From NCBI RefSeq assembly GCF_000150275.1, contig NW_002060974.1, positions 12,090-26,113 of the forward strand: a DNA stretch of 14,024 nucleotides, read 5' to 3'. The first letter of the stretch is position 1. Each line of letters begins with the position of its first letter. Below, one piece after another: positions 3,918 to 10,150 of this stretch. Position numbers and translations under genes: made by a program. The DNA is from Trichoplax adhaerens. Lineage: Eukaryota; Animalia; Placozoa. The notes below the pieces were generated by a model. The model saw only the letters and a program-made list of their open reading frames with translations. It searched no databases and was not told the origin of the DNA.

Positions 3918-4610
3918 CCGCGTCAAGTTGTCCTAGACCGTTCTCCACCTGGTTTATCAATACACTGTGTTTATTTTAAGGACTACTAGAAAGAGGAAAG
4001 TAAGCAGTATTTTCTAGTAATCCAGGATTGTTCCTGTAATACTACTTCCCTATATTAACTACAATCGACTCACAAGAATGAGTAAGACTCCGTTAATATA
4101 AAAAGTTTTAAAGTTTTATTACGATGTTAAAATACAGGCATTAAAAACTACAGATATAATATCAAAAGAATATCTACTGTGACTTCTCCAAGCTAACCTA
4201 TGAATGAATCTATCTACCTCTACAATTATATTAGCCTCCTTACATATCTATCTTTGATGTAAATATTTACATCAAAACTCTATCACAATTTTCCATATAC
4301 AAAATAGTATATCGTAACGGCTACAGTATAGGAGCCCTTTAACATGATCCGCGTCTTGTTTATATCGCCTCGAACCTTGTTCCTCAGCTCCTCGACCAAT
4401 AGTCAATCTTCTAGGGCTTCCACCTGCGCTTCTCACCAAGAGGCCCATTAACACCGCTACATCTTTCCGATTCCCACCAATAGATAATCAATAGCATATA
4501 TTGCACTAACATAGGAGGAACTGACACCATGTTCCACACAACAAGAGACAATTTAATATTACCGTTACAGTTCTGTTTTGTTTTTCAGGATCTAGTACAA
4601 TTTGACGCGG
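3918..4610. mobile_element. MITE-like element with 20-bp terminal inverted repeats (about 153 bp once the nested insertion is removed)
   Basis: CCGCGTCAAGTTGTCCTAGA (3918-3937) against the reverse complement of TCTAGTACAATTTGACGCGG (4591-4610) matches at 18/20. The left end is preceded by TA-CAG, reminiscent of Tc1/mariner ends. No clean TSD on the right. Confidence 0.55.
4035..4569 (-). mobile_element. Solo-LTR-like element (535 bp) nested in a TIR element
   Basis: Ends TGTAA...TTACA. Flanks are GTTCC (4030-4034) and GTTCT (4570-4574), one mismatch. Candidate minus-strand TATA (~4360) and AATAAA (~4114-4120); strand is tentative. Confidence 0.65.
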
Positions 4611-4639
4611 ACAATTTGCCATTTTCTCATCAGTTTCTT

Positions 4640-5262
4640 GGTAACAGTGTTCTACATAGTCTATCGTTATCTTGTTTTGTATAGTATAGCTTATCGCTCT
4701 AATGTTCTACATAGTCTATCGTTATCTTGTTTTGTACAGTATAGTTTATCGTTCTAATGTTCCTCTTAGTCTACCGTTATCTTGTTTTGTATAGTTTATC
4801 GTTCTAATGTTCTACGTAGTCTACCGCTATTTTATTTTGTATAGTTTATCGTTCTACTGTTCCACTGTTACAACTTCCAAATTTTGTAACAAGTACTAGA
4901 TCTGCACTCAACAAGGAGACCCAGTAATTAAGTTGAAGAACTAACTTTATTGTTAAACTAATGAGTTTATATACTTTCTTTATTGTGACCTTTGATCTAC
5001 TGGCGTAGATCACAAGATCATCACTAAGAGAAAGGTTTCCCTAGTTTAGACATTACAAATAGAATATCATACCGAGTATGGCAACATGAGAATACATATA
5101 TAGATAACCTTAATATAGTACCATAACTACATCTATATACGCATGACGTGATACCATCGTGATATTTAACCATATATAGAAAGAAGGTAACATACTAATT
5201 ATGTAACTATCACAGAACATGACATCCACACGGTCTATCGTTATCTTGTTTTGTATAGTTTA
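4640..5262. repeat. Short array C (~50-55-bp unit, GTTCTAATGTTCTACATAGTCTATCGTTATCTTGTTTTGTATAGTTTATC), interrupted by the insertion at 4866-5224
   Basis: About 4-5 copies at 4640-4865, resuming at 5225. A further related copy lies at about 5580-5630. Confidence 0.85.
4866..5224 (-). mobile_element. Solo-LTR-like element (359 bp)
   Basis: Ends TGTTA...TGACA. Exact TSD TCCAC at 4861-4865 and 5225-5229. Minus-strand TATATAAA (4966-4973) is followed by AATAAAG (4945-4951). The block 4937-4980 resembles 5885-5928. Confidence 0.8.
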
Positions 5263-5452
5263 TTTCTAGTTATTTGAGTACTTTATACGATACAGATCAG
5301 TTTTATTCCAAATTTTAATTACTTTTCACGTTATGCTTATTCTAGTGCTTAATACGCTAATCATACATTGTCAACAGCTTAACTCTTCGAATACTCTCTA
5401 TTTATGCTTTTTATTGTAGCTCCGGATCCCTACAAAAAAAGTCGATATTGTT

Positions 5453-5508
5453 TAGAGTAGTCTTGTTACTACGATCCACTGAGATTAAGCATTTGTTCTC
5501 GCGATTTT
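5453..5508 (+). pseudogene. Duplicated fragment of the 28S rRNA 3' terminus
   Basis: TAGAGTAGTCTTGTTACTACGATCCACTGAGATTAAGCATTTGTTCTCGCGATTT, followed by a T-tract and the same trailer as the other copies. Confidence 0.85.
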
Positions 5509-8520: not shown

Positions 8521-8787
8521 CTCATAGTTGCAAGGTTCCACATAGTTTATCGTAACGATGTTCCACTTACTGTAGGTTATCGTTGTTGGTTTTATATTAC
8601 GCATTGTTTAGTTCACAGTATAGTTTCAATGTTCCACATAGCTTATAGTCTAAATGTTCCTTATAGTTTAGGGTTTATATTTCGCACTCTTTAGTTTACA
8701 GTACAGTACACTCAGTATACAGTATTGTATAATGTGCACTTGGTGAAGTTCACGTGAAATCTAAACTTCACTCACGTTCTTTAGTTA

Positions 8788-9044
8788 GGACCATAGGGAT
8801 GAACCACAATGATTAGGACTTGCACGTGTTAGGAAGGCTTACTATGTATAAATAGTGCAGAAATCTATAGTGTTACATAGAATAGCTATATTGGGACCAT
8901 AGGGAAGAACTGTAATGGTTAAAAACTTCTACAGTAAGTGTTAGGAATACTTACTGTAGATTCTGCAGATAGACTAAGGTATGATCTGCCGTTGAGGGTA
9001 TGATTCTGCAGATACCCTGCGGTATAATTTGCCGTCGAGGGTAT
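8788..9044. repeat. Two adjacent diverged tandem duplications (periods 106 bp and 43 bp)
   Basis: GGACCATAGGGA.GAAC...GTGTTAGGAA..CTTACT at 8788 and 8894. GATTCTGCAGATA...GGTAT.AT.TGCCGT.GAGGGTAT at 8959 and 9002. Confidence 0.8.
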
Positions 9045-9129
9045 AAAATCCAGAAGTTTTAAAGAGAGAGTCGAGATGAAGCACATGGTTCGTCGCTGTG
9101 TTGTTAACATAAATACCGTACGGTACCAG

Positions 9130-10150
9130 TTGTTTGTATGTTCTACCACGGTAGTTTATCGTTGAAATGTATATCGTTATGTTCGACGTACGGTAGTTTA
9201 TCGACCTTACAGCAGTTTTACATAATTTACTGTTATATTCCATATCTTTTATTATCATCTACATAGTTTATGGGTATTATGCTCCACATAGTGTATTATT
9301 TCCATGTTCCATATGCTGTACTGTACTGTAGTTTGTCATTATTATTTCACGTAGTTTATAGTTATTATGTTCCACTTAGTTTATTGCTTTTATGTTCCAC
9401 ATAGTTTATCGTTATTAGGTTCCACGTAGTTTATCGTTATTATGTTCCACACAATTTATTGTTATTTTACTCTACATAGTTTATAGTTCTTTATCTACCA
9501 CATAGTTTCTCGTTGTGTTTCAAATAGTTTTATAGTAATTATGTTCCACACAGTCTATCGTTATTATATTCCACATACTGTAGTTTATTCTTACTATGTT
9601 CCACATAATTATTATATTCCACACAGTTTATCGTTATTATATTCCATATAGTTTATCGTTATTATGTTCCTGTAATAAATGCGTTTCACAATAACTATCT
9701 TAGTCAAATGGTATTTTCTAAAAGGCTTTTATTACAAGGTTTTTAGGAATAGTAGAGCAATAATTAATTACTACAAGAATCTAATCTAAAATCTAAAAAT
9801 ATTCCGAGCTCAAAGCGAAGTGAAGTCTCTTCTCCTCTGTGAGCTCATTTCTGCATTTCTTATAAACATTTCCTTAAATCTATTTATAACAATCAGACAT
9901 GAGTCATCTAACAAAATACTTTTCTCTAATAATACATCATTATTTTTTACATTCTAAATCATTCTACTTAAGATGTCACTACTCTTCTATTAACGTCTAG
10001 GCCCTTTCTTCGATCATCTAATATTAGCTTCACGATAACATCTATTCAGAATAACCTACCTTTATCAAATATAGCTATCCGTATAATCAAATATGGGTGT
10101 ATCACTACTGTTCCACATAGTTTATTGTTTACTATGTTCCACTTAGTTTA
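9130..10150. repeat. Degenerate 25-bp monomer array (TCGTTATTATGTTCCACATAGTTTA), interrupted by the insertion at 9671-10109
   Basis: About 25-bp periodicity at 9290-9670, resuming at 10110-10150. Confidence 0.85.
9671..10109 (-). mobile_element. Solo-LTR-like element (439 bp) with a degenerate right end
   Basis: Begins TGTAAT and ends ...ACTACT (CA expected). TSD GTTCC at 9666-9670 and 10110-10114; removal restores ATTATGTTCCACATAGTTTA. Shares CATGAGTCATCT..AAAATACTT with the 5745-6187 element. Minus-strand TATAAATA at 9881-9888. Confidence 0.7.

What the first reader, a model, noticed from the sequence alone, without database searches (positions are those of the whole stretch)
4030..10114. 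Four different solo-LTR-like elements all inserted at the GTTCCAC motif: the rDNA spacer repeat as a possible targeted landing pad
Seen: four non-identical 359-535-bp inserts (4035-4569, 4866-5224, 5745-6187, 9671-10109) begin TGT, three end ACA, and each is flanked by a 5-bp duplication. The duplication is TCCAC twice and GTTCC twice (one with a mismatch). Three inserts split a repeat monomer within the same 7 bp of a ~25-bp unit. The fourth uses GTTCC in non-repeat DNA. Known: TG...CA ends with 4-6-bp TSDs are hallmarks of LTR retrotransposon integrases (5 bp is typical of BEL/Pao and Copia). The well-known rDNA-targeting elements (R1, R2, Pokey) insert in rRNA coding sequence and are not LTR elements. 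Inference: a group of LTR retrotransposons prefers the IGS sub-repeat core, possibly as a safe harbour, and the copies were then reduced to solo LTRs. All four seem to point antisense to rRNA transcription. With n=4 in a motif-rich region, chance plus a generic palindrome preference cannot be excluded.
Basis: partly seen in the sequence, partly recalled or inferred. Interest (0 to 1): 0.85.

Follow-up and report, generated by a model that had tools for sequence, protein, structure and literature searches.

The report
Four solo LTRs in rDNA spacer
Four leftover ends (solo LTRs) of extinct retrovirus-like jumping genes sit in the ribosomal-DNA spacer of a placozoan. Their shared landing motif reflects the ordinary weak sequence taste of such integrases, not a dedicated landing pad, although one of the four families is unusually concentrated in ribosomal spacers.

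Summary
All four inserts have the stated ends and 5-bp duplications, and precise empty sites for two of them (F1, F2) exist in sister spacer copies. Each insert is one member of a dispersed family: about 39 hits for F1, and 65, 486 and 255 first-look candidates for F2, F3 and F4. Nearly all copies are solo.

One F2 remnant elsewhere keeps a tRNA primer-binding site next to the LTR. This shows that these are true LTRs and that F2 lies antisense to the rRNA.

Motif targeting is not supported. No non-rDNA copy has TCCAC or GTTCC as its duplication: 0 of 25 F2 sites, 0 of 9 F4 sites, 0 of 6 F1 sites, and none of the roughly 98 F3 left flanks listed outside the rDNA contigs.

Instead, 40 non-rDNA sites show a weak palindromic preference, TAW|GNNNC|WTA, at the same positions as the published HIV-1 consensus. 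The spacer monomer (TAT-GTTCC-ACA) fits it well. GTTCCAC positions are 3% of the spacer but carry 21-48% of the predicted insertion propensity.

One new point: about nine of roughly 21 distinct F1 sites lie in rDNA spacers. They use different duplications and both orientations. F2-F4 show no such bias.

Other windows of this scan have already noted the same solo-LTR superfamily.

The parts
4035..4569 (-). Solo LTR of family F1 (535 bp). Duplication GTTCC (4030-4034) / GTTCT (4570-4574).
   Evidence: Ends and flanks. About 39 genomic hits. Exact empty site in L015. Empty-form contigs in four read sets. AATAAA on the minus strand only.
4866..5224 (-). Solo LTR of family F2 (359 bp). Duplication TCCAC (4861-4865 and 5225-5229), inside a 55-bp spacer repeat.
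   Evidence: Empty sites in L015 and L010. Orientation fixed by the primer-binding site next to the homologous end in L055. TATA and AATAAA on the minus strand.
5745..6187 (-). Solo LTR of family F3 (443 bp). Duplication TCCAC (5740-5744 and 6188-6192), inside a 25/50-bp spacer repeat.
   Evidence: 147 pattern matches with diverse left flanks. Same TATA-AATAAA layout as F2 on the minus strand.
9671..10109 (-). Solo LTR of family F4 (439 bp, internally deleted by about 105 bp, last base mutated). Duplication GTTCC (9666-9670 and 10110-10114), inside a 25-bp spacer repeat.
   Evidence: The orthologous copy in C1394 keeps the extra ~105 bp. TATA and AATAAA on the minus strand.
6193..8529 (.). Main 50-bp spacer sub-repeat array carrying the GTTCCAC core. 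Related arrays lie at 8-1900, 2260-2885, 4648-4863 and 9329-9670.
   Evidence: 109 GTTCCAC cores in the reconstructed empty spacer.
10959..11240 (.). It is absent from sister contig C1296, is made of two dispersed repeat pieces, has no TG..CA ends, and is not at GTTCCAC.
   Evidence: No tRNA or Rfam match.
13279..14024 (+). Start of the 18S rRNA gene. It sets the direction of rRNA transcription.

Best explanation
The four inserts are solo LTRs. Each is the remnant of one integration by a different family of a now coding-less lineage of LTR retrotransposons in a placozoan genome.

Shown steps:
- A retroviral-type integrase made a 5-bp staggered cut.
- These elements are tRNA-primed (shown for F2).

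Inferred steps:
- LTR-LTR recombination removed the body of each element.
- The occupied spacer variant was then copied to some, but not all, rDNA units.

All four landed at or near GTTCC/TCCAC because these integrases share a weak palindromic preference, TAW|GNNNC|WTA. This is the same kind of preference, at the same positions, as the published HIV-1 consensus. In the AT-rich spacer the core TAT-GTTCC-ACA-TA is by far the best and most repeated match. It is therefore a generic preference meeting a motif-rich target, not a dedicated landing pad.
For: Families and solo state:
- Each insert belongs to a dispersed family.
- Almost every copy has its own perfect 5-bp duplication on both sides, so the copies are solo.

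True LTR nature:
- Locus L055 has an F2 LTR followed by AT and a 19-nt stretch complementary to a tRNA 3' end ending in CCA. About 290 bp of internal sequence and the last 50 bp of the LTR follow, all within one CATCT duplication.

Real insertions:
- Empty sites exist for F1 and F2.

No motif targeting:
- Duplications outside rDNA are diverse and never TCCAC or GTTCC: 25 F2, 9 F4 and 6 F1 sites, and about 98 F3 left flanks listed outside the rDNA contigs.

Generic preference, from 40 non-rDNA sites:
- T(-2) 29/40, p = 2e-6
- G(+1) 20/40, p = 1e-7
- C(+5) 16/40, p = 7e-5
- A(+8) 29/40, p = 2e-6
- A hand tally of the first 38 F3 flanks gives T(-2) about 70% and A(-1) about 63%.

Weight-matrix test:
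- The matrix places 39% of the spacer's insertion propensity on GTTCCAC positions, and 48% within 4570-10160. Those positions are only 2.9-3.5% of the sequence. Per-family matrices give 21-39%.
- The HIV-1 consensus (-3)TDG\(G/V)TWA(C/B)CHA(+7) has its signature bases at the same positions (PMC4422553).
Against: - With the per-family matrices, the chance that three of three in-repeat inserts hit the motif is only 0.01-0.06. A small residual excess cannot be excluded.
- The F2 site is a mediocre match, at the 76th percentile.
- The matrix rests on 40 sites pooled from three families.
- F3 was checked on one flank only.
- No full-length element was found, so the superfamily (Ty3/gypsy, BEL or Copia) is unknown.
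Confidence: 0.8

Rival explanations
1. One reading: a group of LTR retrotransposons specifically recognises the GTTCCAC core of the spacer sub-repeat and uses it as a targeted landing pad.
For: Four of four inserts in this spacer have GTTCC or TCCAC duplications. One further F1 copy in another rDNA contig also follows ...TTCCAC (L025). Under uniform insertion this would be very unlikely.
Against: None of 25 F2, 9 F4 and 6 F1 sites, and none of the roughly 98 F3 flanks listed outside the rDNA contigs, has these 5-mers. Other F1 insertions in spacers use GTAAC, ATACT, GGACC, AAAAC and TYCGC. The generic preference already puts 21-48% of the propensity on the motif. A fifth insertion in the same window is not at the motif.
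Confidence: 0.05
2. Regional targeting by one family. F1, but not F2-F4, integrated preferentially into rDNA spacer chromatin, for example through an integrase tether to nucleolar or rDNA chromatin, without a fixed sequence motif. This is compatible with the best explanation for the motif coincidence.
For: - About nine distinct F1 sites have spacer-like flanks, against about 12 elsewhere. Six of the nine have their own duplication: GTTCY, GTAAC, ATACT, GGACC, AAAAC/AAACC and TCCGC/TTCGC.
- F2-F4 together have about 4 spacer sites among about 467 copies or candidates. Fisher p = 5e-11.
- The spacer core 17-mer occurs only 319 times in the assembly. In the listed part, all matches are on rDNA-type or small contigs. 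The contigs involved carry 18S and 28S pieces.
Against: - The rDNA contigs are gap-ridden, partly redundant and rearranged, so the count of independent sites is approximate.
- These contigs also hold other repeats and may simply be a repeat-retaining region.
- Retention and copying within arrays could inflate one family by chance.
- No coding F1 element exists to test for a tether.
Confidence: 0.35
3. The inserts are not LTRs. They are short non-autonomous DNA transposons moved by a retroviral-like DDE transposase (Ginger-like, MITE-like), which would also give TG..CA ends and short duplications.
For: No coding partner was found. There are only about 11 integrase and 13 reverse-transcriptase matches in the genome, none near a listed copy. 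Nearly all copies are solo.
Against: L055 has a tRNA primer-binding site directly after the F2 end, followed by internal sequence and a second LTR end within one duplication. TATA and AATAAA occur in U3-R-U5 order. Terminal inverted repeats are only about 6 bp. Earlier scan notes report an LTR fused to a tRNA copy in the same genome (not tested here).
Confidence: 0.04

Closest known systems
Solo LTRs of LTR retrotransposons. In this species the only coding remnants described are Ty3/gypsy 'Tag' and Mag clade fragments (Wang et al. 2010, PMC2871265).
   Same: TG..CA ends, short terminal inverted repeats, 5-bp duplications, TATA and poly(A) signal order, a tRNA primer-binding site in one remnant, and dispersed multi-copy families.
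   Different: No gag-pol body remains for any of the four families, so the superfamily cannot be assigned. The 2010 survey reported LTR elements as only 0.04% of the genome and did not describe these solo-LTR families.
Weak palindromic target consensus of retroviral integrases with a 5-bp stagger (HIV-1: TDG|GTWAC|CHA; PMC4422553).
   Same: Dyad-symmetric preference with T three bases before the first joining site, G and C at the two ends of the duplication, and A at the mirror position. The preference is weak and does not depend on genomic region.
   Different: It is derived here from 40 fossil sites of three placozoan families, not from experimental integration. An extra A/T preference at -1/+7 is seen here.
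rDNA-specific mobile elements: R1, R2 and R4-type non-LTR retrotransposons, and Pokey (piggyBac).
   Same: They reside in rDNA units. Occupied and empty units coexist.
   Different: Those elements cut one defined sequence, mostly in the 28S gene, and almost all their copies are there. Three of the four families here are dispersed genome-wide. The fourth (F1) is enriched in spacers, but at many different sequences.
Region-targeted LTR retrotransposons (Ty5 to silent chromatin, Ty1 and Ty3 to Pol III genes, chromoviruses to heterochromatin). This comparison is from general knowledge, not tested here.
   Same: F1 shows regional rather than sequence-level bias, which is the pattern expected from a chromatin tether.
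   Different: No integrase or chromodomain is available for F1. A retention bias is not excluded.

Membership tests
LTR retrotransposon (solo LTR) | 5'-TG...CA-3' ends with short terminal inverted repeats | tested here: met
   F1-F3 in the window, and the family-typical F4 copies, begin TGT and end ACA. The window's F4 has a mutated last base.
LTR retrotransposon (solo LTR) | 4-6-bp target-site duplication, with a different one at each copy, and an empty site that has one copy of it | tested here: met
   46 perfect 5-bp duplications. Exact empty sites for F1 and F2, and for another F1 copy at window position ~8787.
LTR retrotransposon (solo LTR) | Primer-binding site complementary to a tRNA 3' end directly inside the 5' LTR | tested here: met
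   Met for F2 only. In L055 the LTR is followed by AT and then 19 nt complementary to a tRNA end ...CCACCA. Not found for F1, F3 or F4.
LTR retrotransposon (solo LTR) | Internal gag-pol (RT, RNase H, integrase) between two LTRs in at least some copies | tested here: not met
   The only internal F2 sequence is unique in the genome. The ~11 rve and ~13 RVT_1 matches lie on contigs without listed copies of F1-F4. Open frames beside LTR copies are host genes. The families are therefore coding-less in this assembly.
LTR retrotransposon (solo LTR) | U3-R-U5 signals: TATA box followed by a poly(A) signal in one orientation | tested here: met
   On the minus strand, TATA then AATAAA in F2 (252, 274), F3 (267, 290) and F4 (222, 377); AATAAA only in F1 (450). 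No functional-looking AATAAA on the plus strand.
Site-specific rDNA element (R1/R2/Pokey-like behaviour) | Most copies sit at one defined rDNA sequence | tested here: not met
   F2, F3 and F4 copies are spread over all large contigs with diverse duplications. F1 spacer copies use at least six different duplications.
Region-targeted LTR element (Ty5-like logic), F1 only | Significant excess of independent insertions in one chromatin domain relative to other families | tested here: inconclusive
   9 of ~21 distinct F1 sites are in spacer-like DNA, against ~4 of ~467 for F2-F4. However, the rDNA contigs are fragmented and redundant.
Ty3/gypsy, BEL/Pao or Ty1/copia superfamily | RT/integrase phylogeny and domain order | not testable with these tools
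   No coding region is linked to any of the four families.

The most novel reading that the evidence does not exclude
Family F1 was an LTR retrotransposon with a real integration bias for rDNA intergenic-spacer chromatin, regional rather than motif-based. This would be an LTR-element counterpart of the rDNA-resident non-LTR elements, preserved as fossils in a very transposon-poor early-branching animal.
Probability: 0.3. Interest if true: 0.6.

Novelty: new member of a known kind. Interest (0 to 1): 0.3.

Why it matters
The finding turns an apparent targeted landing pad into a worked example. A weak, generic integrase preference combined with a highly repeated matching motif can mimic site-specific targeting.

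It also adds to evidence that this placozoan genome, published as almost transposon-free, holds hundreds of unannotated solo LTRs from extinct families.

It flags one family (F1) whose concentration in rDNA spacers deserves a proper test with long-read rDNA assemblies.

Tried and rejected
F3 flanks were obtained instead from a pattern search that prints the matched letters. A first pattern was too long, and a strict one found only 3 copies, because the window copy has an extra C near its end.
- The F2 internal sequence from L055 found no other copy.
- Long open frames beside LTR copies were N-runs or host genes, namely carboxylesterase and G6PD.
- tRNA and Rfam scans of the fifth insert were blank.
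- Public runs were available only as short contigs. They confirmed the F1-empty junction but could not resolve F2, F3 or F4 filled-versus-empty ratios. Depth-based copy numbers are not reliable there.
- Orientation bias was considered and rejected. Counting all spacer insertions seen, roughly 9 are antisense and 4 sense, which is not significant.
- No consensus of any element was built. Only a host target-site weight matrix was made.
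Full report
**Context**

The window is rDNA intergenic spacer. 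It is full of 25-, 50-, 51-, 55-, 108- and 134-bp sub-repeats that share a GTTCCACATAGTTTA-type core. It ends in the first 746 bases of the 18S gene on the plus strand. It lies at C1383:12090-26113 in a 105.6-Mb, 1414-contig assembly. The size and contig number fit Trichoplax adhaerens from my memory, but I did not verify this.

**Observation**

- F1 (4035-4569) is flanked by GTTCC/GTTCT.
- F2 (4866-5224) and F3 (5745-6187) are flanked by TCCAC.
- F4 (9671-10109) is flanked by GTTCC.

The odd ACT end of F4 is a private mutation, since other family members end in ACA. The window's F4 copy also lacks about 105 bp that the orthologous copy in contig C1394 still has.

**They are real insertions**

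The next spacer on the same contig (L015) joins window position 4034 directly to 4570 with one GTTCT. It also joins the F2 flanks with one (T)TCCAC. A diverged spacer copy in C1394 (L010) has F1 filled and F2 empty. Contigs joining 4029 to 4570 occur in all four public read sets laid, which come from two organism labels and four studies. F1 and F4 are shared with the diverged C1394 spacer. F2 and F3 were seen only in C1383 and its near-identical sister C1296. F2 and F3 therefore look younger.

**What they are**

Each insert is one member of a dispersed family.
- F1: about 39 hits.
- F2: 65 first-look candidates.
- F3: 486 candidates, with 147 exact-pattern matches.
- F4: 255 candidates.

Almost every copy carries its own perfect 5-bp duplication on both sides, so the copies are solo.

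One F2 copy (L055, C1410) is a small internally deleted element. It reads LTR, then AT, then a 19-nt stretch complementary to a tRNA 3' end ending in CCA. About 290 bp of internal sequence with a short ATG-initiated frame follow, and then the last 50 bp of the LTR. The whole structure sits within one CATCT duplication. This shows tRNA-primed reverse transcription, meaning a true LTR element. It also fixes the U5 end at the window-left end of F2, so F2 lies antisense to the rRNA.

F3 has the same TATA-AATAAA layout as F2 on the minus strand. F1 and F4 have AATAAA on the minus strand only.

The families share short U5 motifs (such as ATTCTTGTGAG in F1 and F3) and a terminal hairpin in F2 and F3, so they are probably distant relatives.

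No coding partner was found.
- The F2 internal piece is unique in the genome.
- The genome has only about 11 integrase and 13 RT matches, none on a contig with a listed copy.
- Open frames beside LTR copies are host genes.

The published survey of this species' repeats reports LTR elements as 0.04% of the genome and does not mention solo-LTR families (PMC2871265).

**The motif question**

Outside rDNA, no copy has TCCAC or GTTCC as its duplication.
- 25 F2, 9 F4 and 6 F1 sites with perfect duplications were checked.
- Of the 100 F3 left flanks printed, only the window copy has TCCAC; its C1296 sister was not among those matched.

Forty non-rDNA sites instead show a dyad-symmetric preference.

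| Position | Count | p |
|---|---|---|
| T at -2 | 29/40 | 2e-6 |
| A at -1 | 24/40 | 1e-3 |
| G at +1 | 20/40 | 1e-7 |
| C at +5 | 16/40 | 7e-5 |
| T at +7 | 20/40 | 0.04 |
| A at +8 | 29/40 | 2e-6 |

My hand tally of the first 38 F3 flanks gives T(-2) about 70% and A(-1) about 63%. The signature bases fall at the same positions as in the HIV-1 consensus (-3)TDG\(G/V)TWA(C/B)CHA(+7) quoted in PMC4422553.

The spacer core reads TAT|GTTCC|ACA and TGT|TCCAC|ATA, so it is a good match. A symmetrised weight matrix trained only on non-rDNA sites ranks the four real sites as follows.

| Site | Percentile in the reconstructed empty spacer |
|---|---|
| F4 | 99.7 |
| F3 | 97.3 |
| F1 | 93.9 |
| F2 | 76.4 |

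The matrix assigns 39% of the whole spacer's propensity to GTTCCAC positions, and 48% within 4570-10160. Those positions are 2.9-3.5% of the sequence. Per-family matrices give 21-39%. The chance that three of three in-repeat inserts hit the core therefore rises from about 2e-5 to about 0.01-0.11. That is unremarkable for a pattern picked out after the fact.

A fifth insertion in the same window (10959-11240) has GATAT duplications, is absent from C1296, and is not at the core.

**New point: family F1**

F1 behaves differently from the other three families. About half of its copies lie on rDNA contigs, with spacer-like sequence directly on their flanks. Those contigs carry 18S and 28S pieces.

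I count about nine distinct spacer sites. Six have their own duplication: GTTCY, GTAAC, ATACT, GGACC, AAAAC/AAACC and TCCGC/TTCGC. The GGACC site is exactly empty in the window near 8787. Both orientations occur.

Spacer-type repeats are a tiny part of the assembly: 319 exact copies of the 17-nt core, on rDNA-type and small contigs as far as listed. Against F2-F4 as internal controls (about 4 spacer sites among about 467), Fisher's test gives p = 5e-11.

This could reflect a regional integration bias. It could equally reflect retention and copying in a repeat-rich, rearranged rDNA neighbourhood. The contigs are gap-ridden and partly redundant, and they hold other repeats.

**Caveats**

- The window's rDNA unit seems to sit at the edge of an array.
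- Summed contig depths in spacer-only bins are low compared with the dispersed families. This spacer variant may therefore be low-copy, but the tool warns that such depths are unreliable.
- The superfamily cannot be assigned without coding sequence.
- I built no consensus of any element. The only model made is of host target sites.

**Verdict**

The LTR interpretation, the orientation and the empty sites are supported. Motif-specific targeting is not supported, and a generic integrase preference explains the coincidence. The regional rDNA bias of F1 is the only part that may be more than ordinary.

Noticed in passing
window 10959-11240: A fifth insertion (282 bp) flanked by GATAT, absent from sister contig C1296. 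It is a composite. A ~60-bp piece (window ~10968-11029) recurs at 90-95% identity in 25 or more dispersed loci. A ~150-bp piece recurs at ~80% identity in about ten loci. It has no TG..CA ends and no tRNA or Rfam match.
   Followed up: partly
L055:1481-2219 (C1410:8201472-8202185): An internally deleted F2 element. It has a full LTR, a 19-nt tRNA primer-binding site, an internal tandem repeat of about 25 bp, a short ATG-initiated frame, and only the last 50 bp of the second LTR, all within a CATCT duplication. Its internal part is unique in the genome.
   Followed up: yes
G000:C1366:24161-27618: An uninterrupted 382-aa frame with an integrase (rve) match lies about 2 kb from spacer-type GTTCCAC repeats. 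This may be a coding LTR element in or beside an rDNA spacer.
   Followed up: no
G000:C859:919-1064: Two F3 LTR ends face each other about 100 bp apart, U5 ends inward. This is reminiscent of the 'two U5 ends' derivative noted earlier in this scan.
   Followed up: no
window 8-9670 and rDNA contigs: Sub-repeats of several different lengths (25 to 134 bp) all keep the same GTTCCACATAGTTTA-type core: 109 GTTCCAC in the spacer and 319 exact 17-mers in the genome. This conservation across repeat families suggests a protein-binding site, such as a spacer enhancer or terminator element.
   Followed up: no
whole genome: F3 and F4 alone, with hundreds of copies of 440-560 bp, add up to more DNA than the 0.04% LTR content published for this species (PMC2871265). 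The solo-LTR families therefore seem unannotated in that survey.
   Followed up: partly
L004:2347-3290 and L075:551-1500: A further repeat of about 1 kb (84% identity) is shared between rDNA contig C1377 and contig C1305, where an F4 solo LTR is inserted into it. Its type is unknown.
   Followed up: no
C1377:131692-135217 (L005) and C1377:295391-298916 (L004): The same F1 copy with identical flanks occurs twice in inverted orientation on C1377, next to a truncated 28S piece. This is either an inverted segmental duplication or an assembly redundancy in the rDNA region.
   Followed up: partly
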